Shown here one piece after another: positions 7,529 through 45,810 of a stretch of 57,288 nucleotides of DNA. Origin of the DNA: Vitrella brassicaformis CCMP3155 (Eukaryota > Protista > Chromerida). The first letter of the stretch is position 1. Every line of letters begins with the position of its first letter. The notes below the pieces were generated by a model. It was given only the letters and a program-made list of their open reading frames with translations. It did not search any database and was not told the DNA's origin. The DNA lies in NCBI GenBank assembly GCA_001179505.1, contig CDMY01000528.1, positions 1 to 57,288 of the forward strand. Direction: 5' to 3'. Position numbers and translations under genes: made by a program.

Positions 7529-10153
7529 CCAACAGACACACACACACACACACACAGGGAGAGCCCAGCCGCAGATTGACAGACAGAAATCGACACCGTG
7601 TGCGGCGCGTGTGTGTGTGTTGGTCAGTGGTGCGTCCGACGTCCTGTCCTTTGCCGTCGAGCACCATCCCGCCCCCCGACGCAGACACAGAGCCGCCCAG
7701 GAAGAACATATCCTTGAAGAGAAGCAAGAAACGGCTCACTGCCGCCTAGAAAGGCCTGATCATAGACAGGACAGCCTGCCTGACATCACACCACACCACA
7801 CCACACCATGGCTGCCTGCCTGCCTGCCTGCCGACCGGCTCCCTCTCTCTCCCCTTTTTTTTATTTGTCCTTTGTGTGCATAGAATGAGTGCGTCTGTCT
7901 GTCTGTCAGTCAGTCTGTGTGCCCTTTTTGTGTCCATCTGATTGTCGGATGCCACGCTCGACAGACGGGATGGACGGAATGGACGCGCAGAGGGAGAGGT
8001 TTTGTATTAGCCGGCTTGGGTGGCGGCTTGGCTTGGCCTGGCTGGTGCGGTGTGGCTGGTGCGGTGGTTTGTTTCACGGACAGTGAAAGACAAGACGACG
8101 TTTATCTTTATTTCCTTTCCTTTTCTTATACGGCTGTTATGGCTGTACGCACCGTCTATGTGTCTATGTGTCTATGTGTGTATGTATGTGTATGTAAGCA
8201 GACAGAGACGATTGGTCGTCTTTCTTTCCTTTCTGTGCATGCCATGCGTGTGTGTGGTGGGTATGTGGTGGGCGGGGCGGTTGTGTGGGTGTGGTGTGGT
8301 GTTTGGGTGGGTGTGTGGGGGTGCCTGACAGAGAGGCGGCCAATCGCCTGACACACAAAGGCAGACAGACAGACAGACAGAAGGAAGGCAGATAGAGAGA
8401 GATAATGACAGATAGAGGGAGAGGAGCTTATTTAGAAGCTCACGGGGCTAAATGATGACTGACTCGCTTGGGGGGGCCTGTGGGCGGGTTGGATTGCCCG
8501 ATGGATGGATGGATGGACAATCGCATCAACCGCCGCTGATCGAGATAGCATAGCATGGCCGGCCGGGAATGGATGGATGGTGTGGTGTGGCCAGGGGCAC
8601 TCACACGTGCCTTCCGGGAGGGAGGGATGGATGGACAAGTGAGAGGTGAATGGTGTGTATCTTATCTGTCTATCCGTGCATCTGTGCCTCACATGTGTAC
8701 GCGCGCCAGTGCCCTCCCACCCCTCCCCTCCCCTCCCCTCCCCGCCCCCTTGCCGATCGTAGCAACCGTGACTACTTTGTTCTTCCTCTCTCCCTCCCTC
8801 TCTCTGTGGTGCGTTTGTATCTATACAACGGTCTGTCTGACGGCTTGCCTCACTGGACTCTCCTTGATTGATTGATTGATGGGATTGTATGACTGCGTTT
8901 TTGCCGACGTCTGACTGACTTGACGTGACCCTCCCTCCCTCCCTGTGTCCCTGCCTGCCTGCCTCTCGACTCACTGGGATCCCTCCTGTGTGCTGTCTGG
9001 CTGCGTGTGCACATGGAACGACAAGTAGGTGCCTGGAAGCCAGCCAGCGCTTTCACGGCATCCACACAATTCACTCACGCACGCCAGACAGCAGGTAGAG
9101 GGCCCGGTGCAGTCAGTCACTGTCTGGCAGATAGACGGGCAGACAGGCGGATGGTGGTCAGAGATAGGTGGGCGGACGAACGGATCGGATGGATACCGAT
9201 CGATCGGATCGATCTGCATCATTGCATTTGTATACGTATACGTATGTGTATGTGTCCCCGATCCATGTCGTGCACGTGTGTGTGTATGTGTGTATGTCAG
9301 ATCGAGGAGAGAGTGATTTGTACGGATCGGATGGGCGCATTAATTGCGCTACGCAGACGTGTGCGCGTGCCACTCACTATATATAACGATAGATATCAAT
9401 CGACTGACTGGCGGCGGCGTGGGGTTTGGCTGACTGACTGACTGGTTGGTTGACTGATTTGATGGATGGATGGATGCATTTGGACCAGCTCTGGCACTCA
9501 TTGCCTCACCCAGACTCTGTTGAGTGAAAGAAAGCAGTGGCTTATTTGCAACAAAGAAACGCACCCACAAAATCGAAGCAGCCTTTGATAGCATGAGGCT
9601 TCGTATGTACTTTTCGCATGTACTTCCCGGGTAGGCGGAGTCATCGGCACACGGCGGGGAAGCGCCCTCATGGCCGAGGCGAGTATTCTCGCCAAAGGAG
9701 CTCGCATTACTTTGGCGAACAGAGTTTTAGTTTGATGACAGGCATGTCTGATGCCTCCACAATTCCTCTCATCACCATCATCGGTAAGACCTCTCGGCCC
9801 ATTCACTCAGTGAGCCAGTGCGCTACGCCTTCCCATCAGCGAGGCCAACTGAGGGAGGCGGGCAGACAGATGATGCATGAGAGATGGAAACGACAGGCAA
9901 CACATTCCCTTCCCTCCCTGCGTGGCTGTGCGGTCTGTGTGCCGTCAGATCTGACGGTGACGGGCTGAGTGAGAGGTTCTGGACGGCTCTGACGGGCAGC
10001 ACTGATCAGTCGGGCTGCTTCTTGATGGCTGACGCCAAAACTCACACACTGAACTGTGAGTCGGCAGACTGAGAGCACAGGCACACTGATGACTGCATCC
10101 CATCTCGCTGTGTGGCTGCTTCCTTGGTGCAGGAGGTTGACCGTGTTCGTCAG

Positions 10154-11904
10154 ATGGACAGTAGCCACGACGCCCCGGCTCCCTCGAGACGTGGGCGCCA
10201 AGAAGAGACCGACAGCAACAAACAGCATCGCGAAGCGGTGCGCACAAGTCCACACCCACACCCACACAGACACACAAACTCATTGATGTGTGTCGCTGGT
10301 CAGGTGCCTGATGATGACGGCGGCGCCAAGAAGCGTAGACGCGTAGACATCGGCCCTGCAGCTGGTGGTGGTGGTGCTGGTGGACACAGTGGAGGTACGC
10401 AAAGCATCGGCTGCTGTTGGTGGACTGCACATCGTCATGACCCTCCTGTGCTGTGTGTTGTGGTGCCTTCAGGTGGCTCGGTTGGTGCGGGTGGTGCTGC
10501 GGCAGAGTCACAGCAGCAACAGGGAGGTGCCATCTCACTGTCGGCAGATCTGACGGCCCCCATGCAGCACCCCAACCAGCAGCAGCAGCAGCAGCACCCC
10601 GTGTGGTACGTCTGCGCCCACCGCGGCAGCGATTTTCCGCTGCGGGATGTGCTGCATCTGAGGAAGACCTGCAAATGGGCCAGCGGCCTCTTCGGAGCGC
10701 CTCAGCTGCGGCAGCTGCTCAGCCAATGGACAACTGACGATGAACTCAGCACACAGGCGGGGCTGCGACGGACGGCCAACGGACAGCAGCTGCTGACATT
10801 CGACGACCAGCAGATGGGCGAGGGTGACCTGCTGGCAGCGCTGTGTGTGGCGGAGGCGGGCGGCTGGAGTGAGATGAGCGAGGCGGTCGAGCTGGCGGGG
10901 CAGTGCGGCAACTGCCAGCTGCCTGTGAGGCTCACTGCGGCCGATCTGCACCAATACCCAAACAAGACGGTAAGCCAACCGAGTGAGGGAGGGAGGAAGG
11001 GAGGGAGAGAGGGAGGGAGGATGGCTTTCAATCGGTGTGTGGTGTGTTGATGTGTTGTGTGTGCAGGCGTATTTGGCCGCTCCCCGTGTGTTGGCTCAGC
11101 TCAAGATGGTCGGCCCCCACATCCACTTCGGCGACAACACGACCTTTGAGCTCTTCCGCTACGGCAACACACTGCGGGCCATCAAGAACCAGGCCGCCTA
11201 CGAGATGGACATCAACCCGCCCCTCCCTGCCAACCACCTCTACCAACAGCACCGACAGCAGCACGACCCGCCAGTCCGCAGCCGCATCGGATATGCCCCG
11301 TCTGCGGGCTGGGTGGTGGCCGTGACTCCTTACAACTACTCATCTGTGTCGTCGTTTGTCAAGAGCATCGTCATCGACCACTTCGCGGGCACTCACCAGA
11401 TCAACACCACTGCCCGTACAATGGACAGGTCAGGCAGGGCATCACTCTGTTTGGCCATTGCCACGTCACATACGAGTGTGTGTACGTTGTGTGTGTGTGT
11501 GTGTCAGGCATGTCGACAACAACCAGCTGCACACCCTCATGACGCAGTCCCCCCACACACCAGTGGAGGGGTGCACCACGACCACATCATTCCGCCTCAC
11601 TGACTTTTTCGCTTACCGTCGTCTCGTCCTGACGGGCACCGGCCGCTCGTTCGTCGCATGGATCACCGTCGAGCTCCACCAACATCGGTCAGCCCAGCTC
11701 GGCACAGCGAGGGGGAGGGAATGCGGTGTCACTCTTATCTCTGTCCTCTGCTGTCATTTGGTTGCAGTGAGTGTTAAGGTCTTCACCACCGAGTCGGCTG
11801 TGTCTGGTGTGGGCGGCGCCTTCAAGGACCGCTTCCCAGTGACTTATCGGCTGGCGCGTGCGGTGCTGGGGACCGTCATCTCAGCCAGGATCTTCGGCCA
11901 ATAG
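10154..11904 (+). CDS. F-box-like lineage-specific family, copy A (in frame only if the last 80-nt intron is retained)
   Basis: Exons MDSSHDAPAP..|VPDDDGGAKKRRR..|GGSVG..HPVWYVCAHRGSDFPLRDVLHLRKTCKW..YPNKT|AYLAAPRVLAQLKMVGPH..|HVDNNQLHTL..|..FKDRFP..RIFGQ*; strongly similar to five other copies in the window. Confidence 0.7.
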
Positions 11905-13035
11905 CCAGCTGAGGTATGTGTGCATCAAACACGACTGAGACGAGCAGGTGATGCCGACACGACGTACCCAATGGTGTGCCTTCTATCATTCGGTGTGTGT
12001 CAGGCCGGGCGGCGGTGCTGATATTGGAGCGATCCGCCCGACATATTCTCTCTCGCCAGTGTGGGTTACCGGTAGATAGAGGCGGGCGGGCGGGGACTTC
12101 CTCTCGAGCCGTGTGGTCGTGTGGTGCCATGGTGTTGGGTGATGGATAGCTGGATGGCTCGATGGAATGCCTCTTCCTCTCCTCATGACACGTAAAGCTG
12201 TCAATCGTTTCCTTACACCTCTCTGCCCGTCCGTCTGTCTGTCTGTCTATCTCGCTCGGCCCTTTCTCTCTGTCGTGCTGCTGTCCCCTCCCCTCCGCTC
12301 CCCTCTCCCACTGCTCCCCCTCATGTGCAGTGGCCGACCAGACCGGTGAGGTGTGTGTGGGTCGGAGAGAGAGGACAGACAGACAGCACCAGAGGGGAGA
12401 TGGGCATACACAGCAAGGCACACACACGGTGGCCTGATTGAAGTTAAAGGGCGGTAGGTGCTGATGCCCTCGGCGAGCCCAAAGGCAGGCAGACAGACAG
12501 ACAGCCAGACAGCCAGATGGAATGATGAACGTGTTTAGTTGCATTGAGTGAGAGGAACGGTGTGCGTTTGATGGACGGCCGTATGGGGGATGTGTGTGTT
12601 CGTATGGCTGAATGCCTGGCTTTGCAATGCAACGAGTGAATAGTCTTACCTAATCTGATCGCATCCATCCGAAGCGCACCAAACATACGGTGTCTGTACC
12701 ATTACACGGGTCTCCATCTGTCTGTCTGTCTGTCTCTCGACGCCGCTGGGTGGCGGGCGGACAGGGAGCAGCACAACGTCAATCCATTCGCAGGCACGAT
12801 CTATGCACACACACACACATCACATACAAGGGGAACACCCACCACACCCACATCTGTCTGTCTGTCTGTCTGCCCCTCTCTCTGCCAGCTGCTTACTGAC
12901 TGTACAAGACACATAAAGCGAACAGCCGGCATGCAGACAGACGGGGAGGCAGGCAGGCAGGCAGGCAGGCAGGCCAGAGTGCACGCCAGCCACTAGCTAA
13001 GCTAACTAACGAGCTACGAGCGGGCAGCGAGAGCA

Positions 13036-14012
13036 TCAGAGCTCCTCAAAGATCGACCCAAACACGCCCGCGAAGGGGTCCACGTGCGGCTGTTGTCCCC
13101 TGTCCTCTGCAACCGCCGTCTTGTCGCTCCCTGCCACTGCCTGGTGCTCCTTGTTGTGCGCCTCCTCGGTGATGTACTCCTGCCCGTCGCTGGTCTTGCG
13201 CGTGGTCTTGGTCTTGACCGTGCCATTCGGCTCGGTCCACTTCTCTGTCACGATGGTCTCCTGCTTGCCGTTGACATTGCGGTGCGCCACGCTCTTGCTG
13301 TATCCCTTCTGGCTGGAAAACGACCCCCCGGAAGACGACGAGAATGACGAGAACGATGAGCTGCTCGAGCTGGAGAAAGACGTTGAGAAAGACGCCGACC
13401 CGCCCCCTCCCCCGCCACCGAATGCCGCGAAGGGGTCGGCATCGAACCCTTTGAACATGTCCTCAAATCCCTTGAAGAAGTCTTTGAACATCTCGTCGGC
13501 CTGGGCGAAGCTGAAGTGGTGCGCAGCGCCGAAGTCAAAGCCGCCAGCACCGCCAGCGAGGGAGGCGTCGTACTGTTTCCGCTTGTCGGGGTTGCTGAGG
13601 GTCTCGTATGCCTCGGCTATGCGGATAAACCGCTCCTCGGCCTCCTTCTTGTCACCTGCAGTGCAGCCACACAGCCGGCCACCGGTGACGTAATGGGCGG
13701 TAAGATATCTTCTCGCCAGGTGCGCAAGCGCTGACCTTGGTATTTGTCAGGGTGGTACTGCACGGCCATCTTGCGATACGCTTTCTTGATCTCGTCGTCT
13801 GTGGCCTTCTGCTCGACTCCCAACACGTCGTAGTAGGTCTCCTTCTCCTCGCCCGCCAGCGCCTGCGGACACACACATCACATCACACACAAAGAGATCG
13901 GGTCGTTCTCATTCATCGGCTGGCTGGAGGTGGGAGATGCGCTGACCAGGAAGGCACAGACGCCCAGCAAGATGCCGAGGAGCAGACGGAGATGCGATGC
14001 TGGAAACGCCAT
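13036..14012 (-). CDS. DnaJ/Hsp40 (J-domain + G/F-rich + Ser-rich), signal peptide, ends FEEL; probable ER-luminal J-protein
   Basis: [22 protein letters not shown]|ALA then YYDVLGV...[15 protein letters not shown]...[24 protein letters not shown] (HPD motif); G/F and poly-Ser region; C-terminal GSIFEEL*. Confidence 0.92.
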
Positions 14013-14329
14013 TGAGCCCACACACCACCTGTTGCTTTCGTACAGATCTCCCAAAGGACAGTCCTCGAGAGCTATCCAAACGCACCAGAAACCGCTGAGC
14101 ACGTCACTTTCTGCGATCGGCCGACGATGGCAAGCTTGCAAGAGGCGGGCCTTTCGAACGTGTGTGTGAGTGTCTGGAGTGCTCTCCTTGCTGTCGGGGC
14201 CATGGATCTACGCTGCCGATGATTCGACGCTGCAGAGTGGTACTCAAGGAGAGAGCGCACATCTTCCGACTGCCCGGATCTCCTCAACAGCACATCGACG
14301 AAGCATTCAGAAGCGCCGGTGCCCGCAAT

Positions 14330-15103
14330 ATGACCGACGCAGCAACGGAGTCGAAGCTGAGAGGTGCAGATGAGAAGAAATGACTCATGACGACGGTGTC
14401 ATTACTGTGTCTGTTCGTGCATAAGTGTGCGCAGGGTGCGTGGTGGGCTCGCTGGTTGCGGACGCTGCTGGGATGCCTTGCCACTGGGTGTATCCCAAGC
14501 TGCACAAGCCCACCTATGAGACCATGATCAGCGAGCATCCTGATGGGGCGTTGGAGTTCTCGACCACAACATACAACCCGTTTTATGGTCAGCGGCTTGG
14601 CGGATACGTGGCAGGAGTGACTGGTCAACCATTGTGATTGTGTGTATTTGTGTAGTTCTGCCTGTCGGCGACTTCTCAGGTGTGCAGTGGCCGCTCTGAT
14701 GGCCGATGGGTGTATGTGTTTCCGTCTGTTTGTCTGTCTGTGTGTGTGTGTGTGTGCGCGCGCGCGCAGGTTATGGCGACCAGAGCTACGTGTTGCTCAA
14801 GAGCCTGGTGGAAGCGAAAGGATGGAACAAGGTACGTGTGCCAATCAATGTCGAACAACGTCTCACAGGCACTCAACGGTCTCTTTCTCCCTCTCTGCCT
14901 GTGTGTGTGTGTGTGTCAGGAAGTGTACAAGAGGCTGTTATACGAGCATTTTGGCCCCGGCAGCAAGTACGAGCCGTCAACTATGGCGACGGACAGCTAC
15001 GAGCACGACGGCAAGACGGCCCAGAAGATCCCCGTGCACGTGAGTGTTCTATCGCGAGTGGTGGAGTATGTCGTCACACGATTCATTGTGAAGCGCAGAA
15101 AGG

Positions 15104-15139
<36 letters not shown>

Positions 15140-16172
15140 GAGGTCGATGTGTGAACATCTACATATCATGCACTGAGATGGCCACACCCACACAGACAGA
15201 GAGAGATCGCTCTTTCTTCGCCTGTGTCTTTTGCACCCCACCCAAATCCACCAGGGCGGCTGGCGGCACGCGTCCATCAAGGAGTTCCTGAAGCGCTACG
15301 GCGAGAGCGCATCAGTGACCGGTCTGGCCAAGGACGCCCAGATGGACGGCGTGGCCAAGGTGGCGCCCATGGTGGCTCTCTACGCCGGCAAGCCGGAGCT
15401 GCTGACGGCCGTGGAAGAGATGGTGCGCGTCACGCAACAAGACCCAATCGGTATGGATGGATGGATGGATGGATGGCTGGACACCAGGCCCTGCACAATG
15501 AAACACGTGTGTGTGTGTGTGCCTTTGTCAGCTGTGGAGTGCGCCAAGACGGCTGCCCACATCATGGAGCGCATCTTGCTGCAGGGCACGGGCGATGATG
15601 TGCCGTCTATCATGCCGGATCTGTTGCGCGAGGCCGACGAGGGGCTGCCAGACGGAGAGGCCACGACCAAACTGAAGAGGGGCCTGAAAGAGGTCAGACA
15701 GACAGACAGACCGACAGACTGGCGGGGATGAGCGTGTGTCTGGTGGGTGGATGCTGCTTCCTCATCTGCAGGTTGTGTCCTCCCTGGATGAGCCGTACGC
15801 CACCTTTGCCGTCAGAGAGACTGTTGGCCTCTCGTGTGAGCACGCAGCCATACACACACCCATCCGTCCATCCATTCATTCATTCATTCAGCAACCTGTC
15901 CGTGCGTGTGTGTAGGTACGGTGCCCAACAACCTGATCAACTCTCTCCACTGCTTTGCCACCGCCACCGCCACCGCAACGCTGTCATTCGAGCGCGTCAC
16001 TCGTGCGACCATGAAGGCTACCGGCTGCACCTGCTCGCGGCTCCTTTTCCTGGGCGCGTGTGTGGGTGCTGCAAAGGGCGAGGTGGCTGTGCCTGACGGG
16101 TGGCTGGCCAAGACCACCAGAGGCGAGGAAATAAGGGAGCTTGCCAGGCAGCTGGTCGACATGAGAACTTGA
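14330..16172 (+). CDS. SELENOJ: Selenoprotein J / J1-crystallin family protein (ADP-ribosylglycohydrolase fold), Cys form
   Basis: Spliced RGCVVGSLVADAAGMPCHWVY...NPFY...YGDQSYVLLKSLVE...HFGPGSKY...GGWRHASIKEFL...QMDGVAKVAPMVALYAGKPELL...VRVTQ...GCTCSRLLFLGACVGA; these motifs match my recollection of fish SelJ/jellyfish J1-crystallin. TGA stop at 16170-16172. Confidence 0.85.
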
Positions 16173-16703: not shown

Positions 16704-18462
16704 CTATTGGCCGAAGACCATGGCTGAGATGATGTCCCCCAGCACCACACGCGCCAGCTGAGTGGTCTGCGGGAAGCGGTCCTTGAAGGCGCCACCCACA
16801 CCAGACACAGCCGACTCGGTCGTCCTGACGAACACACGCACTGCAAATGGATGACAAGAGAGGACAGAGATGAGAGTGAGTGCTGTATGTGTGGTGTATA
16901 GGCTTGTAAGCCCTGCCCCTCGCTGTGTCATGCTGGGCGCACCATTATTGTGATAGACCAGATCCTTGACGGTGATCCACGCGACGAAGGGGTGGCTGGC
17001 GTCGGTGAACACGAAATGACGACAAGTGCCAGTGCCACTGAAGCGGTCTGATGCGGTTGTGGTGCATCCCGCCACTGGTGTGTGGGGTGACTGTGTCAGC
17101 AGAGTGTCCAGCCGGTTGTTGGCAACACGCCTGACACCCACAACCCCCCCCCCCCACACACACTCATAACACACTTTCCTGTGTCGTGGCAACGCCCGCA
17201 TAGAGTGATGCCCTGCCTGACCTGTCGATGAGGATGTTCGGTCTGTTGATCTGGTGAATCGTCGCGAAGTGGTCGATGACGATCCTCTTGACACACGACG
17301 ACACTGACGAGTAGACCCAATCAAAGCGCAACGGCCGCCAGCCCTCGGGCGACAACGGCCGATAGTCGATCCTGCTGCGGACGGGCGGGTCGTGCGGCTG
17401 TCGGTGTTGCTGATAGGGGTGGTTGGGAGGGAGGGGCGGGTCGATGTCGATCTCGAAGCCGTCCTGGTCCTTGATGGCCATCAGTGTGTTGTCGTGCTGG
17501 AACAGCTGGAAGGTCACGCCGTCGCCGAAGTCGATGTGGGGGCCGACCATCTTGAGCTGAGCCAACACACGGGGAGCGGCCAAATACGCCTGCACACACA
17601 ACACATCAACACACCACACACCGATTGACAGCCATCCCTTCTCCCTCCCTCCCTCCCTCCCTCCCTCGGTTGGCTTACCGTCTTGTTTGGGTATTGGTGC
17701 AAATCAGCGGCCGTGAGCCTCACAGGCAGCTGGCAGTTGCCGCACTGCGCCGCCAGCTCGACCGCCTCGCAGATCTCACTCCAGCCGCCCGCCTCCGTGA
17801 CACACAGTGCCGCCAGCAGGTCACCCTTGCCCATCTGCTGGTCGTCGAATGTCAGCAGCTGCTGTTCGTTGGCCGTCCGCCGCAGCCCCGCCTGTGTGCC
17901 GAGCTCATGGCTGAGCCGCTGCCGCAGCTGAGGCGCTCCGAAGAGGCCTCTTGCCCTACTGCAGGTCTCCCTCAGACGCAGCACATCCCGCAGCAGAAAA
18001 TCGCTGCCGCGGTGGGCGCAGACGTACCACACGGGGTGCTGCTGCTGCTGCTGCTGGTTGGAGTGCTGCATGGGGGCCGTCAGATCTGCCGACAGTGAGA
18101 TGGCACCTCCCTGTTGCTGCTGTGACTCTGCCGCAGCACCACCCGCACCAACCGAGCCACCTGAAGGCACCACACAGCACAGGAGGGTCATGACGATGTG
18201 CAGTCCACCAACAGCAGGGGATGCTTTGCGTACCTCCGCTATGTCCACCAGCAGCAGCAGCAGTATGGCTGATGTCTACGCGTCTACGCTTCTTGGCGCC
18301 GCCGTCATCATCAGGCACCTGACCAGCGACACACATCAATGAGTTTGTGTGTCTGTGTGGTTGTGGACTCGTCCGCACCGCTTCGCTATGCTGTTTGTTG
18401 CTGTCGGTCTCTTCTTGGCGCCCGCCTCTCGAGGGAGCCGGGGCGTCGTGGCTACTGTCCAT
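16704..18462 (-). CDS. F-box-like family, copy B (apparently intact)
   Basis: Same exon structure as copy A; no stop or frameshift found across ORFs 17956-18504, 17514-18248, 17164-17619, 16704-17324; ends AMVFGQ*. Confidence 0.8.
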
Positions 18463-30080: not shown

Positions 30081-31545
30081 CCAGCGTGAGTCCGCACCGC
30101 ACGATCGAACAGGCAACATTTACTTGAGGAGAGAGAGGCCATGGGTGCATGGCATGGATGTGCGTATGCACATTATACAAGTGTGTGTGTGCAGACATAC
30201 AAATAAGTATAGAAGACATACAGAGATCGACAGACAGACAAGGCAGCAGAGATGGATGGACCACAGGCGCATGTGAATCTCACCCCACCCACCTCATGCG
30301 GCAACCATCACACACAACACCACCGAGACGCCACATGTACCCGCACAGCCTCAGCAAGGAGGACTGGACCGCATCGCCACACTGTCCATTCGCATGGCAA
30401 TGAGAGCGGTCAGCAAAACGCCTCGGCGACCGACTGCGATGCATGGGGTCACACAAAGACAATATGGAGTCAGGACCACACACAGAGAGAGAGGAAGGTA
30501 AGCCCACCCACCAGCCACCCACACACATCAATCAACCGCCGTACACCCACAAGGAGGCAAAAATGACCGACTGCATGGGAACAGCCGGTAAGTCTATGTC
30601 TGTCTGTTGTGATGTGTGCATGTGGATGGGCAACGGGTGTGAAACATACCGCCGTGTCTGTATGTGTGGATGCGTGTGTAGAGCAACGAATTCGCCACTG
30701 TGGACACAGACACAGAGAGAGAGGGAGAGAGACAGGGGAGAGAGGTCAGTGATCAGCCACAACGTGCAGCAAAGACCAACAGACCACCGACCGCCCAGCC
30801 GTTCGGTGCATTCAGTCGGTCAGTCAGGCAGATGTCTGCTCCAGCGTGAGTCCGCACCGCACGATCAAACAGGCAACATACTTAATGAGAGAGAGGCCAT
30901 GGGTGCATGGCATGGATGTGCGGATGTACATTATACAGGTATGCACATGTATACTTGATGTATGTGTATAAGGGTGTGTACAGAAGACATACAAATGTGT
31001 ACAGACATACAAAGAGAGAGAGAGGGGGATGGGGAGCCGACGCGAGGGGAGGAAGCAGACATGGATCAAGGGCACATGCATCCCACCCACCCCATACAGC
31101 ATCCGCACTGCATCACAGCATGAGTAAGATCTAGAAGGATTGGAGCACATCGCTCCAGTACGTACGTATGCATTGCATGCATATCACAGCATACAGCAGA
31201 AAGGCGCCTCGTATGGAGGCCTCCAGGGACCGCACACGACACGAAATCAGTAAGCACATGTAGACAGACACACAGAAAGTAAGCCCTCCCGCCCGCCCAC
31301 CAACCCACCCACGAAGCAGGCAAAAACTGATCATGACTGACTGCACAAGGGCAGTCTGTCTGTCTGTCTGTCCGGTGCGATGATATGTGTGTGGGTGGGC
31401 AACGAGTGTGAAACGAAGTACACATTGTACCGCCACAGTGTGTGTGTTTACGTATGTGTGCAGGCAGCAACAAATTCGTCACGGAGGGATGCGTGGATGG
31501 GTGAACACACATGGTGGGTGATCGGTTGGTCTGCCTCTCTCTCTG
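30081..31545. repeat. Two tandem copies (~30081-30840, ~30841-31545) of the non-coding module found downstream of family copies
   Basis: CCAGCGTGAGTCCGCACCGCACGATC(G/A)AACAGGCAACAT...GCCATGGGTGCATGGCATGGATGTG starts both copies; GAATTCG(C/T)CAC recurs at ~30689 and ~31472. Confidence 0.8.
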
Positions 31546-31763: not shown

Positions 31764-32996
31764 CTATCGGTCGAAGAACATGGCTGAGATGACGGTCCCC
31801 AGCACCGCCCGCGCCAGCCGAGTGGTCTGCGGGAAGCGGTCCTTGAAGGCGCCACCCACACCACACACAGCCGACTCGCTGCAGATCCATGATGGTGATC
31901 CACGCGACGAATGAGTGGCTGGTGTCCGTCAGGACGAGACGGCCACAAAAGCCGTCAAAAGTTGAGCGTGATGCAGTGGTGGTGCATCCCGCCACTCGTG
32001 TGTGGGAGGACTGCGTCAGCAGGTTGAGCAGCCGGTTGTTGGCGACATGCCTGACACACACATATTATACAGAAATAACACTCGCGTGACGTGGCAATGC
32101 CCTCTCAAAGTGATGCCCCGCCTGACCTGTCGATGAAAGTGTGAGTGGAGTTGATCTGGTGAGTGCCAAAGAAGTGCCGGAGGACGATGCTCTTGACACA
32201 CAAGGACACGGACGAGGAACTCTAAGTTTCCCCAGTCATCGACCGCCAGCCCAGGAACCGATCATAGTCGATGCTGCTGCGGACGGGCGGGTCATGCTGC
32301 TGTCGGTGCTGCTGGTAGGGGTGGTTGAGAGGGAGGGGCGGGTCGATATCGAGCTCGAAGCCGTCCTCGTCCTTGATGGCCCGCAGTGTGTCGCCGTGTT
32401 GGAACAGCTGGAAGGTTACGCCGTTGCCGAAGTCGATGTGGGGGCCGACCATCTTAAGCTGAGCCAACACACGGGGAGCGGCCAAATACGCCTGCACACA
32501 TAGCACATCACACACAGAGAGAGAAGAATGAACAAGACCCTCTCTCTCCCCTCCCGCCCCTGTGTATGCGTCTCACCGTTTTGTTGGCGTGTCTGTTGAT
32601 GTCGTCAGCAGTCAGCCGCACCGGCAGGGTGCACCGGCCGCACTGCTCCGCCAGCCGCAGTACGTCGGCGACCTCGTCCCACCTCTGCTCCTCCACCATC
32701 CAGATGGCCGGCAGCACCACACGTGGCTCAGACACCGTCTGGGCGTCGAAGACCAGCACGGTGTCGAGCCGTGACCCGTCGGCGAGCCGTTTGCTGTGCA
32801 GCGAGTGGGTGAGTCGTTTGCGGAGTGCATCGGGAGGGAAGTCGACGATGCTGTGCTGGCGGGTTGCCACTCTGAGGCTGCCGACGTCTTTGATCTTGAG
32901 CAGCCAAACTCGCGAGTGGCGGAAGATGCAGGGGACCGCCTCGCCGTTGACGACCGGCGAGTCCGTGTCGCTGCTCCTGCTGCTGATGGCTGACAT
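31764..32996 (-). pseudogene. F-box-like family, copy C (divergent N-terminus; premature TAG plus deletion/frameshift)
   Basis: Core AYLAAPRVLAQLKMVGPH exon present; in-frame TAG at 32222-32224 where paralogues have Tyr; the last intron and flanks are deleted near ~31883, shifting the frame. Confidence 0.8.
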
Positions 32997-33548: not shown

Positions 33549-33848
33549 NNNNNNNNNNNNNNNNNNNNNNNNNNNNNNNNNNNNNNNNNNNNNNNNNNNN
33601 NNNNNNNNNNNNNNNNNNNNNNNNNNNNNNNNNNNNNNNNNNNNNNNNNNNNNNNNNNNNNNNNNNNNNNNNNNNNNNNNNNNNNNNNNNNNNNNNNNNN
33701 NNNNNNNNNNNNNNNNNNNNNNNNNNNNNNNNNNNNNNNNNNNNNNNNNNNNNNNNNNNNNNNNNNNNNNNNNNNNNNNNNNNNNNNNNNNNNNNNNNNN
33801 NNNNNNNNNNNNNNNNNNNNNNNNNNNNNNNNNNNNNNNNNNNNNNNN
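33549..33848. other. Assembly gap (300 N)
   Basis: Run of N. Confidence 1.
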
Positions 33849-34985: not shown

Positions 34986-36721
34986 CTAGCCCACAGACGC
35001 CGATGCAGATGCAGACGCCGCCGCGGCCTCGCCACCTGCTGAGATTGCATCAATCAGGTGGCACAAACAGGCAGACACACGTGACGTGCCCCCCTTCTTT
35101 TGCTGCGTACCTCTGCTGCCCTCTCCGCTGCTGCCGTCATCATCAGAGTCCTCCCAGTCGTCCTCCATATCGTCATCATCGCCATCGAAATCTGCATTAC
35201 ACACACGGACGATAGAGAAGGGGTCATGCATCCATCCATTCATCTGTGTCTGCTTCCGTACCGTCGTTATCGTCCAGATCGTCGCTATCGGAATCTGCAC
35301 CGCACGCCAACAGCAGTGAAGACAATCCATCCATCCATCCATGGGCGTCCCTTCTCGTGTGTCCTGTGTCCGTACCTTCGTCACTGTCGTCCTCCGGCTG
35401 CTGTCCCGGTTTCGGTGCGCCGTCAAACAGGATGGCTGAGATGATGTCACCCAGCACCACACGCGCCAGCTGAGTGGTCTGCGGGAAGCGGTCCTTGAAG
35501 GCGCTACCCACACCAGACACAGCCGACTCAGTCGTAATGACCCACACACGCACTGCAAACGAATGACAGCAGAGGACAGAGATGAGAGTGGCACTGCATT
35601 CCCTCCCCCCTTGCTGTGCCGTGCTGGGCTGACCAATGTTGGCGACATCCGTGACGGCAATCCACGCGACGAACGATTGGCAGGCGTCGGTCAGCACAAG
35701 AGAACGACGGAGGCCGACATAGGGGAGGTACGATGTTGTTGTGGTGCATCCCTCACTGGTGTGTGGGGGGACTGTGTCACGATGGTGTGCAGCCGGTGGT
35801 TGTCAACATGCCTGACACACACAATACATAACGTACACTCGTGTGTCGTGACAGTGCCCACACAGAGTGATGCCCCGTCTGACCTGTCGATGAAACTTGT
35901 AGTGTAGTTGATCTGGTGAGTGCCCTCGAAGTGGCCGAGGACGATGCTCTTGACGAACGACGACATAGATGAGGAGACCCGAGCGCACATCGGCATCTAG
36001 CCCTGGGGCAGCCGATATGTGGCGCTGCGGACGGGCGGGTCATGTGGCTGTCGGTGCTGCTGGTAGAGGTGGTTGGGAGGGAGGGGCGGGTCGATGGTCA
36101 GCTCGAAGCCGAACTGGTCCTTGATGGCCCGCAGTGTGTCGCCGTGGTGAAACAGCTTGAAGGTCACGCCGTTGCCGAAGTGGATGTGAAGGTCGACCAT
36201 CTTGAGCTGAGCCAGCACACGGGGAGCGGCCGAATACGCCTGCACACACAACACACCACACACCGATTGAGAGCCATCCTCCCTCCCTCCCTCCCTCCCT
36301 CCCTCGGTTGGCTTACCGTCTTGTTTGGGTATTGGTGCAGATCGGCTGCAGTGAGCCTCACAGGCAGCTGGCAGTTGCCGCACTGCCCCGCCAGCTCGAC
36401 CGCCTCGCTCATCTCACTCCAGCCGCCCGCCTCCGTCACACACAGCGCCGCCAGCACGTCACCCACACCCATCTGCTGGTCATCGAAGGTCAGCAGCTGC
36501 TGTCCGTTGGCCGCCCGCCGCAGCCCCGCCTGAGTGCTGAGGGAATGTCCGAGCCGCTGCCGCAGCTGAGGCGCTTTGAAGAGCTCTCTGAGCCAGCGGC
36601 ATGTGGCCCTCAGCTGCAGGACATCATCGAGGCTGAGAAGGAAGAAGCTGCGGCGGCCGACGAAGATGTACTCGATGGGGTGCTGCTGCTGGTTGGGCTG
36701 CTGTTCTTGTGTGTCCTGCAT
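34986..36721 (-). pseudogene. F-box-like family, copy D with acidic C-terminal mini-exons; premature TAG and -1 frameshift
   Basis: MQDTQEQQPNQQQHPIEYIFVGRRSFFLLSLDDVLQLRATCRWLRELF; TAG at 35997-35999 (GGC TAG where paralogues have GGC TGG); -1 deletion at ~35750-35759; tail exons EDDSDEG|DSDSDDLDDND|DFDGDDDDMEDDW|..SVG*. Confidence 0.8.
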
Positions 36722-39947: not shown

Positions 39948-39981
<34 letters not shown>

Positions 39982-40232: not shown

Positions 40233-41542
40233 CTATTGGCCAAAGATCCTGGCTGAGATGATGGGCCCCAGCACCGCCCGCGCCAGCCGAGTGGTCTGCG
40301 GGAAGCAGTCCTTGAAGGCACCACCCACACCAGACACAGCCGATTCGGTGGTATTGACGTGGACATCCACTGCAAATGAAGGACAGGGGAGGACAGAGAG
40401 ATGAGACTGAGTGCTTATGTATGACGCATGGGTTTGTCACCCTCCTCCCCCTCGCTATGCCGTGGTGGGCTGACCGTCATTATACGAGTTCTCCGACATG
40501 TAGATCCATGCCACGAATGAGTGGCCGGCGTCGGTCAGGACGAGACGACGAGAAGTCAAGCCACCGGCAGTGGAGCAGAATGATGTGGTGGTGGTGCATC
40601 CCTCTACTGGTCTGTGTGAGGACTGTCAGCAGGTTGAACAGCCGGTTGTTGTTAACAAGCCTGACACACACACAATACACACACACACTCGTGTGTCCTG
40701 GCAGTGCCCACACACATTGATGCCCCGCTTGACCTGTTGATAGCACGGAAAGTGCCGTTGGTTTGGTGAGTCCTCTCGAAGTGGCTGAGGATGGCCCTCT
40801 TGATAGACGACGACACAGATGAGTAGTCCCAAGCGCCCAGCGACACCCAGCCCGTAGGCGGGAGGTATCCGATCCTGCTGCGCACGGGCGGGTCATCTGA
40901 CTGTCGGTGCTGCTGGTAGGGGTGGTTGGCCAGGAGAGGCGGGTCGATGGTCAGCTCGAAGCCGTCCTGATCCTTGATGGCTCGCAGTGTGTCGCTGTGT
41001 TGGAACAGCTGGAAGGTCACGCCGTTGCCGAAGTCGATGTGAGGGCCGACCATCTTGAGCTGAGCCAACACACGGGGAGCGACCGAATACGCCTGCACAC
41101 ACAACACATCAACACACCACACACCGATTGAGAGCCATCCTCCCTCCCTCCGTCCCTCGGTTGGCTTACCGTCTTGTTTGGGTATTGGTGCAGATCGCCC
41201 GCAGTGAGCCTCACAGGCAGCTGACAGTTGCCGCACTGCCCCGCCAGCTCGACCGCCTCGCTCATCTCACTCCAGCCGCCCGCCTCCGTCACACATAGCG
41301 CTGCCAGCAGGTCACCCTTGCCCATCTGCTGGTCGTCGAATGTCAGCAGCTGCTGTCCGTTGGCCGTCCGCCGCAGCCCCGCCTGTGCGCTGAGCTCATC
41401 GTCTGTTGTCCAGTGGGTGAGCCGCTGCCGCAGCTGAGGCGCTTCGAAGAGGCCTCTCGCCCAGCTGCAGGTTTCCCTCAGACACAGCACATTCCGCAGC
41501 GGAAAATCGCTGCCGCGGTGGGCGAGGACGTACCACACGGGG

Positions 41543-41575
<33 letters not shown>

Positions 41576-42621
41576 GAGTGCTGCATAGGGGCCGCCAGAT
41601 CTGCCGACAGTGAGGTGGCACCTCTTTGTTGCTGCTGTGACTCTACCGCAGCACCACCCGCAGCAATCGAGCCACCTGAAGGCACCACAACACACAGCAC
41701 AGGAGGGTCATGACGATGTGCAGTCCACCAACAGCAGCCGATGCTTTCCGTACCTCCGCTGTGCCCACCAGCAGCAGCAGTAGGGCTGATGTCTATGCGT
41801 CTACGCTTCTTGGCGCCGCCGTCATCATCAGGCACCTGACCAGCGACACACACCAATGAGTTTGTGTGTCTGTGTGGGTGTGGACTTGTGCGTACCGCTC
41901 TGCCCTGCTGTGCATTGTTGTCGGTCTCGTTCGGTCCCACAGCACCGCCCGCCCCCCACTGACGAGCTCCGCTGTCAGCAGCCATGCGCTGGGACGGAGA
42001 CACACAATAAAGGGAGTGGCCGGCCTGTGTGTGCCACTCAGTCATTGGCCATTCAATCCATTCTCACATGTGTGTTGCAGTCAGTGGTGATCTGCGCCAG
42101 CTGCCTGCCGAGGGCCGAGTGGGTATCGCTGAGAGTCTCCAGAACGGTCGACAGGCTGCCGTCCACCATCTCATCATCCTGCAAGAAAGGCAGAAGGACG
42201 GGCTGACCAGTGAGTGCAGCAGCTCGGCCGTGCGGTCTCTGTGACGACCTGTTTGTTGTCGGTATGTGTGGCTATCATCTGCTCGGCCAGATCAACAAAC
42301 GACAGAAACTTAGAGGCATCCTGAAAGCCAGAAGCAGCGCAGCAATGTCAGTGTGGAGCCCTCCCCTTCTCCCTCCCCATCTCACCGAGCGCATCGCTCG
42401 GATCTTCTGCAGAAGGTCACCACCGCTACCACCGCCACTCCCACCTGTGTGTCACATTCCCGTCAGGCAATGAATGACACACAAACGGGTCGCCACTTCC
42501 ATCAGTCAATTGTGTGGTTACACTGCATGTGCTGTCCATCCATTCACCGCTGACCTCTGGCGGACGGCGCCGGGCCGTCACCGTCATTGTCGGTGTCCAT
42601 CGGGAGAACACGCTCACCCAT
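40233..42621 (-). pseudogene. F-box-like family, copy E with private 5' exons; 2-nt deletion frameshift
   Basis: In-phase 5' exons MGERVLPMDTDND..|GSGGGSGGDLLQKIRAMRS|DDEMVDG..|RMAADSG..|VPDDDGGAKKRRR join the family core; GACTGTCAGC at 40621 vs GACTGTGTCAGC in copy B gives a frameshift; ends RIFGQ*. Confidence 0.75.
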
Positions 42622-43764
42622 CTGCACCCACCGAAGAGCCAACAACACACACAAGGAAATGCGATGAGCGCACCAACAGTAGGGACAACGTTAACTCAAA
42701 GCGCAACGGCAGGCAGAGTCTGTCGGTCTCTCATGAAAATTCTCATGAAATGAACTGCCGTCGATGGGGTGTGGGGGAGGGAGGCGGAGCACTTCTTCAC
42801 CCGCTTGACTGAGCAGCTGTTGACGAGGCAGGGGTGGTCAGATAGGGGGCGAGGGCGGGTGCATGGGTGGCTGCGTGCTCGTTTGTCTGTTGCATTGGTG
42901 CGGGCTGCTAGCCTGTGTTTGAGGGGCGGGAGGCAGTCATGGCGTGGTGTTGGGGCGATGGACGGGGCTGGGGTGTTCTCATCGGATGAGTGAGCGTGCC
43001 CTTTGTGCATAGGCATATGTGGATAGATTCATGGAGGCGATTTGGACAAGCGAGTGCATGGATGCCATCTGTCAATTATCTCTTCCTCAATCGACCAACC
43101 CTCAATCATGCGACAAACATGATGAGCGCACCCACAAACCCTCTGTGATTGTTTGTGTGTATCTTCTGCTCTGAGTTCGCAGGGAGGCGGCTTACTGCTT
43201 GGATTTCGGCAGCAGCCTTGCAGCAGCTGGCCCGTCACAGCTGCAAAACCTCTCACTCACGCCGTCATCAAATCTGACACGGAGGCCACACACACGGGTA
43301 TTCATGAAGGGACGGGAGGGCATGTGTGTGTTTTTGTTTGTTGTTGTTTCCTCGTGACTAAAAATGGACTGACTGCACCCAGTGCTTTCTCACTGAGTGT
43401 TCTATCGCTGGTCGCTGATGGACTTCAGTGCATATGCCTACCGATGATAATATATGGCAGGAGGATGTTCTGAGGCATTCACAGACTCATGGCTATTGGC
43501 GGCAACTTCTCAAAGGGTTTCTGGGGTTGCAGGGTATGAAACCCAGACAACGCAACGATCGCTACAGAGATGCGCCAGACCTGCATCTCGGTCTCTATTG
43601 TCTGTCCTCTCGTCCAATCATCATGCGACACACAAACACAAACACAAACACAAACACACGCAGAGAGAGACAGGAGGCATCAGCTGTGTCAACTCACCCA
43701 GAGGAAGCAAAAAGCCAATTGAACCTCGATGTATTGCCGATCCAGCCATTCATGTCATGCAAAG

Positions 43765-44128
43765 AGAGAGGGGGGCCATGGCCATGGCCATGGGTGCATG
43801 CCATGGCATGGATGTGTGTATGCACATTGTATGAGTGTGTGTGTACAGACATACAAATAAGTATATAAGACATACAGAGATCTACAGGCAGACAAGGCAG
43901 CAGAGACGGATGGACCACAGGCACGCGTGAATCCCACCCCACCCACCTCATGCGGCAGCCATCACACCGCCACCGAGACACCACATGTACCCGCACAGCA
44001 TCAGCAAGGAGGATTGAACCGCATCGCCACAGTGTCCATTCGTATGGTAGTGAGAGCGGTCAGCAAAAACACCTCGGCGACCCGGTGGAATGCATCGGGT
44101 CACACACAAACAACATGATGTCAAGACG

Positions 44129-44161
<33 letters not shown>

Positions 44162-44455
44162 CAGGAAGGGATCCCCGCCCGCTCACCAGCCCATCACCAC
44201 CCACACACATCAATCGGAACCAACAAGAAGGCAAAAACGACTGACTGCATGGGAACATCCGGTCTGTCTGTCTGTCTGCTGTGATGACATGTGTGTGGGT
44301 GTGAGTGGGCAACGAGTATGAAATGAAATGCACACTGCACCGCCGCAGTCTATGTGTGTATTTATGTATGCCTGCAGCAACGAATTCGTCACGGAGGGAT
44401 GGCTGGACACATAAAGTTCGTGGTGCATCCATCGGTCGGCCTGTCTGTCTGTCTG
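43765..44455. repeat. Downstream non-coding module, copy behind family member F
   Basis: Near-identical to 30135-30600 (GCATGGATGTG..CAGACATACAAATAAGTATA..CCCACCTCATGCGGCA..TGAGAGCGGTCAGCAAAA). Confidence 0.8.
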
Positions 44456-44469
44456 TCTGCCCTTGAGAA

Positions 44470-45810
44470 AATGCCATGCGCCATCAAACAGGATGGCTGA
44501 GATGGGGCCCCCCAGCACCGCCCGCGTCAGCTGAGTGGTCTCCGAGAAGCGGTCCTTAAAGGCGCCGCCCACACCACACACAGCCGCCTCGGTGGTCCAG
44601 ACCGACACACCCACTGCAAACGAATCACGGGGGAGGACAGAGATGAGAGTGACACCGCATTCCCTCCCCCTCGCTGTGCCGAGCTGGGCTGACCGTTGAA
44701 GCCCAGCTGGACGGTGATGCACGCGACGAACGATTGGCAGGCGTCGGTCAGCACAAGAGAACGACGGAGGCCGACATGGGGGAGGTACGATGTTGTTGTA
44801 GTGCATCCCTCACTGGTGTGTGGGGGGACTGTGTCACGATGGTGTGCAGCCGGTGGTTGTCAACATGCCTGACACACACAATACACAACGTACACTTGTG
44901 TGTCGTGACAGTGCCCACACAAAGTGATGCCCCGCCTGACCTGTCGATGAAACTTGCAGTGTAGTTGATCTGGTGAGTGTCCCTGAAGTGGTCGATGACG
45001 ATGCTCTTGACGAACGACGACACAGATGAGTAGTCCCGAGCCAACAGGGTCAGCAACCGCCAGCCCTCGGGCGGATGATAGTCGATGCTGCTGCGGACGG
45101 GCGGGCGGGTCGTGCTGCTGTCGGTGCTGCTGGTAGGGGTGGTTGGGAGGGAGGGGCGGGTCGATGTCGACCTCAAAGCCGTCGTCGTCGTTGACGGCCC
45201 GCAGTCTGTTGCCGTGGTGGAACAGCTGGAAGGTTACGCCGTTGCCGAAGTCGATGTGGGGGCCGACCATCTTGAGCTGAGCCAACACACGGGGAGCGGC
45301 CAAATACGCCTGCACACACAGCACATCAACACACCACACACCCATTGAGAGCCATCTATTGTCCCTCCCTCCCTCCCTCGGTTGGCTTACCGTTTTGTTT
45401 GGGTATTGGTGCAGATCGGCCGCAGTGAGCCTCACAGGCAGCTGGCAGTTGCCGCACTGCCCCGCCAGCTCGACCGCCTCGCTCATCTCACTCCAGCCGC
45501 CCGCCTCCGTCACACACAGCGCCGCCAGCAGGTCACCCTCGCCCATCTGCTGGTCGTCGAATGTCAGCAGCTGCTGTCCGTTGGCCGCCCGCCGCAGCCC
45601 CGCCTGTGTGCTGACTTCATGGGTGAGCCGCTGCCGCAGCTGAGGCGCTCCGAAGAGCTTTCTGAGCCAGCTGCAGGTCTTCCTCAGCCTCAGGATGTCA
45701 TCGAGACTGAGGAGGTAGAATGTGCGGCGGCCGACGAAGATGTACTCGACGGGGTGCTGCTGCTGCTGGTTGGGCTGCTGCTGGTTGGGCTGCTGCTGGT
45801 TGGGCTGCAT
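44470..45810 (-). pseudogene. F-box-like family, copy F; 4-nt duplication frameshift and -1 frameshift shared with D
   Basis: MQPNQQQPNQQQPNQQQQHPVEYIFVGRRTFYLLSLDDILRLRKTCSWLRKLF; coding strand GACCCGCCCGCCCGTCCGC at ~45100 (extra GCCC); CCAGTGAGGGATGC at ~44807-44816 as in D; 3' end abuts the non-coding module. Confidence 0.8.

What the first reader, a model, noticed from the sequence alone, without database searches (positions are those of the whole stretch)
9700..45810. Six-copy modular F-box-like gene family with shared core, swappable ends and rapid birth-and-death (candidate undescribed ubiquitin-adaptor repertoire)
Seen: six homologues (A 10154-11904 +, B 16704-18462 -, C 31764-32996 -, D 34986-36721 -, E 40233-42621 -, F 44470-45810 -) share intron positions and the core LRQRL..AGLRR.ANGQQLLTFDDQQMG..LCV.EAGGWSE..EAVELA.QCG.C.LPVRLTA.DL..YPNKT|AYLAAPRVLAQLKMVGPH. 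Their N-termini differ: A/B/E have HPVWYV.AHRGSDF.LR.VL.LR.TC.. plus NLS (AKKRRR) exons; D/F have HP(I/V)EYIFVGRR.F.LLSLDD.L.LR.TC.WLR.LF; C is divergent. Their 3' tails also differ. Established: the P-x-E-x-IF...L..D...L...C+.W..L pattern resembles the F-box motif that binds SKP1, and large, fast-evolving F-box/BTB families in nematodes and plants are linked to recognition of foreign proteins. Inference: this is a lineage-specific, combinatorially diversifying CRL-adaptor or defence family, or alternatively a selfishly amplifying unit.
Basis: partly seen in the sequence, partly recalled or inferred. Interest (0 to 1): 0.85.

Follow-up and report, generated by a model that had tools for sequence, protein, structure and literature searches.

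The report
Alga-only F-box-like gene family cluster
Six neighbouring copies of a gene found only in the alga Vitrella belong to a family of about 150 members that pairs a worn-down, probable ubiquitin-ligase docking motif (F-box) with a protein domain of unknown shape; five of the six copies do not give the full-length protein when spliced like the intact one.

Summary
The window is a Vitrella brassicaformis CCMP3155 scaffold with six DNA-level paralogues (75-96% identity by segment) that share intron positions.

The copies are mosaics. A/B/E are about 94% alike up to intron 3 but about 78% after it. C is about 54% like the others before exon 4 and 88-91% after it.

Only B (447 aa) is intact. 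C and D carry in-frame stops, D, E and F carry frameshifts, and A is out of frame unless another acceptor is used. A spliced transcript matches F exactly, and a D-like one also exists.

The family has at least 147 proteins. All 120 listed are Vitrella or unnamed transcripts.

The F-box reading is suggestive, not proven:
- Pfam F-box-like hits stay below threshold (12-17 bits against 24.3).
- A family N-terminal profile finds nothing in PDB.
- Distant members carry a canonical LPPEV...LRRTCK motif, and UniRef names two of them F-box proteins.
- Language-model and ESM-structure look-ups of both N-terminal types return F-box clusters.

The C-terminal ~300 aa models confidently (pLDDT 89, pTM 0.87) but matches nothing in PDB, Swiss-Prot, viral or ESM Atlas libraries.

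No transposon signature was found. Selection is purifying in the exon-3 core and near neutral elsewhere. Nothing supports a defence role.

Verdict: a lineage-specific, probable SCF-receptor family with an orphan domain. Interest is moderate.

The parts
10154..11904 (+). Copy A (annotated P0001, 407 aa). Exons are 10154-10237, 10304-10394, 10473-10969, 11067-11428, 11508-11687 and 11768-11904. It has an NLS-type N-terminus and an HPVWYV motif. Exon 5 is 8 nt shorter than B's (at 11673/11674), so with the homologous splice sites the last exon is out of frame and the model ends ...HQHREC. An AG at 11770-11771 would keep the frame; whether it is used is unknown.
16704..18462 (-). Copy B (annotated P0006, 447 aa), the only copy with a fully intact frame. 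Exons are 18462-18379, 18318-18234, 18160-17679, 17589-17222, 17130-16943 and 16840-16704. The F-box-like stretch is residues ~98-135, and the orphan domain runs from ~150 to 447.
31764..32996 (-). Copy C (annotated P0218, 229 aa). Its exon 3 belongs to a different subfamily (54% identical to B), while exons 4-6 are 76-91% identical. It has an in-frame TAG at 32224-32222 in exon 4. A deletion (31886..31878) removes the end of exon 5, intron 5 and the start of exon 6, so the frame is lost.
35422..36721 (-). Copy D (annotated P0017, 215 aa), HPIEYIFVGRR type. It has an in-frame TAG at 35999-35997 in exon 4 and a 1-nt deletion in exon 5 (35755/35754) that F shares. The usual stop is lost, and the frame runs into acidic tail sequence (to about 34986).
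40233..42621 (-). Copy E (annotated P0004, 509 aa). It has extra upstream exons (42621-41893) plus NLS-type exons. A 2-nt deletion in exon 5 (40627/40626) puts the C-terminal ~100 residues out of frame.
43521..45810 (-). Copy F (annotated P0014, 265 aa) with its transcribed 3' extension. It has a 4-nt insertion in exon 4 (45109-45106) and the same 1-nt deletion in exon 5 as D (44812/44811), and the usual stop is lost. Transcript contig L001 matches exon 4 (from 45025) and exon 5 at 100% and exon 6 onwards at 98.6%, spliced at introns 4 and 5, then runs unspliced to 43521.
33549..33848 (.). Assembly gap in intergenic sequence between C's 5' flank and D's 3' flank. It is not part of any copy.
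30137..31497 (-). Two partial copies of the 3' flank or UTR that follows D (34262-34931) and F (43786-44476), lying downstream of C. They mark the extent of the D/F-type duplication unit.

Best explanation
The six units are tandem and inverted paralogues of a very large gene family that, as far as the databases show, is confined to Vitrella brassicaformis.

The ancestral protein has a short N-terminal three-helix motif that most probably descends from an F-box, followed by a ~300-residue alpha/beta domain with no recognisable relative.

Inferred mechanism: the F-box-like helices dock on SKP1 of an SCF (SKP1-CUL1-RBX1) ubiquitin ligase, and the orphan domain holds the protein to be ubiquitinated. 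Its most variable beta-hairpins would be the likely contact surface. Variable add-ons would set where or with what the receptor works. These add-ons are the NLS-bearing exons of A/B/E, MGxxxS starts, cyclin C-terminal domains and acidic tails elsewhere in the family.

Shown for this locus: it evolves by duplication and by exchange of segments between paralogues (unequal crossing-over or gene conversion, with breakpoints near intron 3/exon 4 and at exon 6), and by rapid decay. Only B is intact and A is doubtful. C, D, E and F carry stops or frameshifts. A spliced transcript contig matches F exactly, and a D-like one carries D's stop and frameshift.
For: Paralogy and shared introns.

Family size and restriction: 147 proteins, and all 120 listed are Vitrella or unnamed transcripts. 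A profile search found 117 clusters at 50% identity. All 30 hits looked up singly are Vitrella, MMETSP or JGI.

Real folded domain: AF2 with a 60-sequence family alignment gives pLDDT 89.4 and pTM 0.87.

Orphan fold:
- Foldseek against PDB gives E > 0.1.
- VIA-align wide gives best Z 5.6.
- ESM Atlas gives TM < 0.3.
- The viral and Swiss-Prot libraries give nothing.
- All 30 listed AFDB cluster hits carry A0A0G4/A0A7S1 accessions with no organism shown; those that can be matched to proteins looked up here are Vitrella.

F-box:
- PF12937 is the only recurrent Pfam family. It hits 7 of 60 members, best E 0.0037, always in the same register.
- P0117, P0130 and P0132 carry LFDLPPEV/DV...LRRTCK. 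P0117 and P0134 are named F-box domain-containing by UniRef.
- The best PDB hit of P0134's N-terminus is the F-box of FBXW11 (E 0.22).
- Atlas features score 0.94 (P0019 1-75) and 0.92 (P0006 88-160), with about 83 of 100 hits in F-box clusters. Structure TM is 0.5-0.6 to F-box proteins.

Mosaicism: A-B 94% against 78% (p=8e-18), and B-C 54% against 88-91% (p<1e-14).

Decay.

Transcription and splicing: L001 is F, with 100% identity in exons 4-5. L002 is D-like and carries the same stop and frameshift as D. A paralogue contig ends exactly at the exon 3 donor.
Against: No F-box profile reaches its curated threshold. The family's own N-terminal profile finds no F-box protein in PDB at E <= 10, and P0117's N-terminus finds none either.

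In the AF2 model the N-terminal 40 residues have low confidence (pLDDT 43-77), and helices 2 and 3 are drawn as one long helix. The A/B/E type lacks the Glu and the leading Leu of LPxE, and B has lost the Trp.

Atlas scores below 0.95 can arise by chance, and they were not calibrated for parts of proteins.

SKP1 binding, substrates and protein expression are all untested. RNA support for B itself is weak: only 0.15 of its words are in the RNA run, and no clean B contig was listed.
Confidence: 0.6

Rival explanations
1. Orphan-domain family that does not work through SCF. On this view the N-terminal helices are not a functional F-box: either only a degenerate remnant, or a different motif. The conserved ~300-aa domain then acts on its own, for example as an enzyme or a regulatory or structural binder. 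Its near-invariant His274, Asp/Asn284-Pro285, Ser312, Cys362, Thr-Thr-Glu409-411 and Arg433 would form an active or binding site.
For: All F-box profile hits are below threshold and there is no PDB hit. The N-terminal confidence in the model is low. The C-type subfamily has lost LPxE altogether. A small set of polar residues is conserved across the whole superfamily.
Against: The motif sits at the same place in every subfamily and is most canonical in the most distant members. Atlas features and structures point to F-box for both types. No fold similarity to any enzyme class was found.
Confidence: 0.27
2. A non-self-recognition or defence repertoire. The family would be a diversifying set of SCF receptors that target foreign (viral or bacterial) proteins, as proposed for the nematode and plant F-box expansions. 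The hypervariable hairpins would be under positive selection.
For: The family is large, lineage-specific and arranged in tandem arrays, with rapid turnover. Variability is concentrated in beta-hairpins at residues ~290-310, 366-378 and 392-405. Segments are exchanged between paralogues.
Against: There is no positive-selection signal here: dN/dS is about 0.5-1.2 in exons 4-6 among copies that are mostly dead, which is what neutral decay gives. Both in-frame stops of C and D lie in the variable loop. There is no expression or infection data and no known pathogen of Vitrella in hand.
Confidence: 0.1
3. A selfishly amplifying unit. The gene would be carried by, or would itself be, a mobile element, which would explain the copy number and the many dead copies.
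For: There are many copies and many fragments (106 of 141 retrieved proteins are partial). Introns are as conserved as exons. A weak hAT-dimerisation hit exists (E 0.29).
Against: No transposase, RT or integrase domain was found in family proteins or in the 10 ORFs scanned from the rest of the window. There is no viral fold match. The duplicated unit is just the gene plus about 300 bp upstream and about 110 bp downstream. The copies lie in local tandem or inverted arrays, as expected of unequal crossing-over. The hAT hit is noise (11 bits).
Confidence: 0.03

Closest known systems
F-box proteins, the substrate receptors of SCF ubiquitin ligases (Pfam PF00646 / PF12937). The closest parallels are the lineage-specific expansions in plants and nematodes, such as FBA/FBD, F-box-Kelch and C. 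elegans FBXA.
   Same: A short N-terminal helical motif with a P-x-E ... L..L ... (T/V)C(K/R)W pattern is followed by a separate C-terminal domain. The family is a large, tandemly arrayed, lineage-specific expansion with many pseudogenes. N- and C-terminal modules vary. Distant family members have a near-canonical LPPEV...LRRTCK motif.
   Different: No member tested reaches a Pfam threshold. The C-terminal domain is not LRR, WD40, Kelch, FBA or any other known receptor domain, and has no structural match at all. The A/B/E and C types have lost key F-box consensus residues. SKP1 binding is untested.
Cyclin F (FBXO1)-like combination of cyclin and F-box modules
   Same: At least nine family members carry a Pfam Cyclin_C domain in the same polypeptide as the F-box-like motif.
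   Different: The order is cyclin_C then F-box-like then orphan domain, whereas cyclin F has the F-box first. Only the C-terminal cyclin fold is detected. None of the six copies in this window has it. The gene models are unverified.
Helix-grip / TBP-like alpha+beta folds (adaptin appendage platform, phosphoglucomutase domain 4, Bet v 1/START)
   Same: The last ~130 residues give the best, but weak, structural alignments to these folds (Z 4-5.6; Foldseek E about 0.1).
   Different: The scores lie in the range the tool's notes call common for unrelated models. The alignments cover a third of the domain or less, and there is no sequence signal.

Membership tests
F-box protein (SCF substrate receptor) | Significant match to an F-box profile (Pfam PF00646 or PF12937 at gathering threshold) | tested here: not met
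   The best hit is PF12937 at 17.4 bits (E 0.0037, P0134) against a cut-off of 24.3. D/F-type members score 12-15 bits. B, A and the window's exons score nothing.
F-box protein (SCF substrate receptor) | A ~40-50 aa motif LPxE(I/L)..I(F/L)..L....L.....(V)C(K/R)xW placed N-terminal to the target-binding domain | tested here: inconclusive
   Near-canonical in distant members P0117, P0130 and P0132 (LFDLPPEV..LRRTCK). The D/F type keeps P-x-E, the LL.L..D.L.LR run and TC(R/K)W, with a 3-residue insertion. A/B/E keep HP...LLRDVLRLR.TC. The C type is largely lost.
F-box protein (SCF substrate receptor) | Three-helix F-box fold | tested here: inconclusive
   ESM-Atlas models of P0019 8-73 and P0006 95-160 align to F-box proteins at TM 0.5-0.6 by query. 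In my AF2 model this stretch has pLDDT 43-77 and two, not three, clear helices after H1. The family profile has no PDB hit. P0134's best PDB hit is the FBXW11 F-box at E 0.22.
F-box protein (SCF substrate receptor) | Binds SKP1 and assembles with CUL1 | not testable with these tools
   No multimer prediction or experiment was available.
F-box protein (SCF substrate receptor) | A separate C-terminal domain that recruits substrates | tested here: inconclusive
   A separate, confidently folded ~300-aa domain exists (pLDDT ~90-97), with variability concentrated in hairpins. Whether it binds substrates is unknown.
Multigene family evolving by birth-and-death with inter-paralogue exchange | Tandem or inverted local duplicates, a mix of intact and disabled copies, and mosaic similarity along the gene | tested here: met
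   Six copies lie within 36 kb. One is intact, one doubtful and four disabled. Segment-wise identity shifts have p from 1e-5 to 1e-21, and nearest neighbours change by segment. D and F share a frameshift, so a dead copy was itself duplicated.
Transposable element or virus-derived gene | Transposase, integrase, RT or capsid domain, or a fold match to viral proteins | tested here: not met
   No such Pfam hit was found in 60 family members or in the 10 ORFs scanned from the rest of the window. The BFVD best hit has E 0.014 and TM 0.18.

The most novel reading that the evidence does not exclude
The ~300-residue C-terminal domain is a new protein fold that Vitrella uses as a rapidly diversifying target-recognition module on an SCF ubiquitin ligase. 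That would be an alga-specific receptor repertoire of about 150 genes, analogous to the F-box expansions of plants and nematodes but built on an unrelated scaffold, and possibly used against foreign proteins.
Probability: 0.15. Interest if true: 0.75.

Novelty: new variant of a known kind. Interest (0 to 1): 0.45.

Why it matters
Chromerids are the photosynthetic cousins of apicomplexan parasites. F-box proteins in this group are hard to find from sequence alone, as PMC11570480 notes for Toxoplasma.

A ~150-member F-box-like family confined to Vitrella, with an orphan and confidently modelled domain, would be one of that genome's largest lineage-specific expansions. It would offer a new receptor scaffold for structural and ubiquitin-ligase work.

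The locus is also a clean example of exon-scale exchange between paralogues, and of pseudogenes that are still transcribed and even duplicated.

It does not open a long-standing question, and its function is wholly untested.

Tried and rejected
- Pfam scan of copy A's exons: nothing, apart from noise hits to PWP3A-B_C and hAT dimerisation.
- First AF2 run with 27 close paralogues: poor (pLDDT 51).
- Family profile against PDB sequences: only polyQ noise from huntingtin fusions.
- N-terminal profile against PDB: no hits. P0117's N-terminus against PDB: none.
- Fold searches of the good model in PDB (Foldseek and VIA-align wide), ESM Atlas, BFVD and Swiss-Prot: no convincing match.
- Language-model look-up of the C-terminal domain: scores <= 0.75, uninformative.
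- Read laying on 12850-18840: dominated by microsatellite and paralogue cross-mapping. It confirmed splicing of the neighbouring gene in RNA run X12 but gave no clean B transcript.
- Transposon idea: rejected for lack of any hallmark.
- Literature: two searches found no description of this family.
- Profile-profile comparison with a bona fide F-box alignment: not run, because no independent F-box sequences were available by reference.


Full report
**What the window is.** The window is GC-rich (about 58%), has short GT..AG introns and is full of microsatellites. Protein searches identify it as the whole 57,288-bp scaffold of Vitrella brassicaformis CCMP3155.

**The observation.**
A spans 9856-12017 on the plus strand, and B to F lie on the minus strand. 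A six-way alignment shows the same GT..AG intron positions throughout.
- The public annotation already has a model for each copy: P0001=A, P0006=B, P0218=C, P0017=D, P0004=E and P0014=F.
- The three N-terminal types are as described. A/B/E have the AKKRRR exon and HPVWYV. D/F have HPIEYIFVGRR...TCRWLRELF. C has a different exon 3.
- The 3' ends also differ. A, B, E and C keep the family stop (F-G/D-Q/R-stop), whereas D and F have lost it.
- The assembly gap (33549-33848) is intergenic. It lies about 550 bp upstream of C's ATG and below D's 3' flank repeat, and no copy crosses it. I could not test its continuity with reads.

**State of the six copies.** I took B's exon structure, which reproduces P0006 exactly, as the reference.
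- B is the only intact copy.
- A: exon 5 is 8 nt shorter, so the last exon is out of frame and the model ends HQHREC. An AG 4 nt further on (11770-11771) would rescue it.
- C: a TAG at 32224-32222, and a deletion fusing exon 5 to exon 6 out of frame.
- D: a TAG at 35999-35997 and a 1-nt deletion at 35755/4.
- E: a 2-nt deletion at 40627/6.
- F: a 4-nt insertion at 45109-45106 and the same 1-nt deletion as D, at 44812/1.
- The lesion shared by D and F means an already disabled copy was duplicated together with its 3' flank (34426-34931 matches 43984-44476).

**Transcription.**
- A transcript contig from JGI sample 3300017148 (L001) matches F's exons 4-5 at 100% and its exon 6 and 3' extension at 98.6%. 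It is spliced at introns 4 and 5, carries the frameshift, and runs unspliced to 43521.
- A second contig (L002) is a D-like spliced transcript with the same TAG and frameshift. It is joined to B's 3' UTR and to the antisense of the neighbouring gene, so it is probably an assembly chimera.
- In RNA run X13, a paralogue contig ends exactly at B's exon 3 donor.
- The neighbouring gene at 14145-16398 is cleanly spliced in RNA run X12, so the RNA data are sound. B itself is only weakly represented.

**Mosaic evolution.** Identity changes abruptly along the gene.
- A-B: 94% through exon 3 and intron 3, but 78% from exon 4 on (p = 8e-18).
- B-C: 54% before the end of intron 3, but 88% in exon 4 and 91% in exon 6 (p < 1e-14).
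- D-F: 96% in intron 4 and exon 5, but 83% in exon 6.
- B's nearest neighbour in exon 6 is D (93%), not A (88%).
- Introns are as conserved as the adjoining exons.

This pattern is what exchange between paralogues gives, by unequal crossing-over or gene conversion.

Nei-Gojobori dN/dS is 0.27-0.54 in the exon 3 core and 0.5-1.2 in exons 4-6. That fits past constraint on the core followed by near-neutral decay of mostly dead copies. It gives no sign of positive selection.

**The family.**
- A profile of 27 members finds 117 clusters at 50% identity among 1.84 billion representatives.
- A search with a 60-member alignment finds 147 proteins of 197-626 aa. All 120 listed are Vitrella CCMP3155, or unnamed JGI or MMETSP transcripts.
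- All 30 hits looked up individually are likewise Vitrella or such transcripts.
- Many scaffolds carry several members, so tandem arrays are the rule.
- Of the 141 proteins I retrieved, 35 span the whole domain and 106 are partial.
- Add-ons recur in the gene models: a cyclin C-terminal domain in at least nine, CBM20, RRM, ubiquitin, acidic tails, and MGxxxS starts in the C-like subfamily, which look like N-myristoylation sites. The myristoylation reading is from my own knowledge of the motif and is untested.

**The C-terminal domain.**
- With the diverse alignment, AF2 models B residues 90-447 at pLDDT 89.4 and pTM 0.87. A helical part (residues ~168-235) is followed by two beta-rich alpha/beta parts.
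- Nothing convincing matches it: Foldseek against PDB gives E > 0.1, VIA-align wide gives best Z 5.6 on an adaptin appendage, ESM Atlas gives TM < 0.3, and BFVD and Swiss-Prot give nothing.
- All 30 listed AlphaFold-DB cluster hits carry A0A0G4 or A0A7S1 accessions, with no organism shown. The ones I could match to proteins looked up here are Vitrella. One of the 30 is named F-box domain-containing.
- Across the superfamily, the conserved positions are W183, LP201-202, G233, LPxxH270-274, (D/N)P284-285, S312, C362, TTE409-411 and R433.
- The most variable stretches are hairpins at ~290-310, 366-378 and 392-405. The in-frame stops of both C and D lie in the first of these.

**The F-box question.**

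Against:
- No Pfam F-box hit reaches threshold.
- The family's N-terminal profile and P0117's N-terminus find nothing in PDB.
- The AF2 confidence there is low.

For:
- PF12937 is the only recurrent Pfam family, hitting 7 of 60 members, always over the LL.L..D.L.LR.TC.W stretch in one register.
- The most distant members carry a near-canonical LFDLPPEV...LRRTCK at the same position. UniRef names two of them F-box domain-containing.
- P0134's best PDB match is the F-box of FBXW11, in register.
- The Atlas language-model look-up gives F-box clusters as top hits for both the D/F type (0.94) and the B type (0.92). About 83 of 100 neighbours are F-box clusters, and ESM structures align to F-box proteins at TM 0.5-0.6.

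I read this as a probable, degenerate F-box. I put common origin at about 0.7, and retained SKP1 binding in the A/B/E type lower than that.

**Other readings.**
- No transposase, RT or viral signature was found in the family or the window.
- No evidence bears on a defence role.
- Two literature searches found no description of the family. One paper notes how hard alveolate F-box proteins are to detect by sequence (PMC11570480).

**Verdict.** The defence and selfish readings are unsupported. The cluster in this window is mostly a graveyard with one intact gene. What is new is the orphan domain and the size of an F-box-like expansion known only from Vitrella. Interest is moderate.

Noticed in passing
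window 14145-16398 (+): A gene with an ADP-ribosylglycohydrolase domain (PF03747), convergent with copy B. RNA contigs show it spliced (exons 14145-14361, 14926-15094, 15253-15443, 15531-15690, 15921-16398). Transcript contig L002 joins its antisense to B's 3' UTR, so either the 3' UTRs overlap or the assembly is chimeric.
   Followed up: partly
window 13036-13874 (-): A DnaJ/J-domain gene with at least one intron lies between copies A and B. The A-B inverted pair brackets two ordinary housekeeping-type genes.
   Followed up: no
family members on other scaffolds (P0035, P0166, P0169, P0172, P0186, P0188, P0191, P0192, P0197): At least nine gene models put a Pfam Cyclin_C domain in front of the F-box-like motif and orphan domain, often with long acidic tails. 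This is a cyclin-plus-F-box combination reminiscent of cyclin F, but in a different order.
   Followed up: partly
family members P0041, P0049, P0057, P0059, P0060 and others; window copy C at 32996: The C-like subfamily starts MG(A/N)xxS/T, which looks like an N-myristoylation site. Copy C's homologous start is MSAISS, so the glycine is lost.
   Followed up: no
P0117 residues ~445-520, compared with window 42553-42068 (E upstream exons): The coiled-coil-like module DLLQKIR..THTDN..LS.L..L.D..SAL sits at the N-terminus of E-type members but at the C-terminus of the distant member P0117. Either the module is mobile, or P0117's model runs into the next tandem paralogue.
   Followed up: no
window 31614-31699, 35143-35244, 49129-49233: A short acidic exon (DFDGD..MEDD..) is shared downstream of C and D and with an unrelated gene near 49.1 kb. 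Intact paralogues such as P0028 and P0035 end in similar acidic tails.
   Followed up: partly
window 10970-11066 and homologous introns: Intron 3 is built of (GGGA)n and (TG)n microsatellites, yet it is 88-99% identical among A, B, D, E and F, about as conserved as the flanking exon 3 core and far more than exon 4.
   Followed up: partly
sequencing runs X11, X14-X18: Marine sediment metagenomes of 2023-2025 hold near-identical Vitrella sequence (up to 0.54 of the words of a 1.8-kb stretch). Vitrella or a very close relative therefore occurs in those sediments.
   Followed up: no
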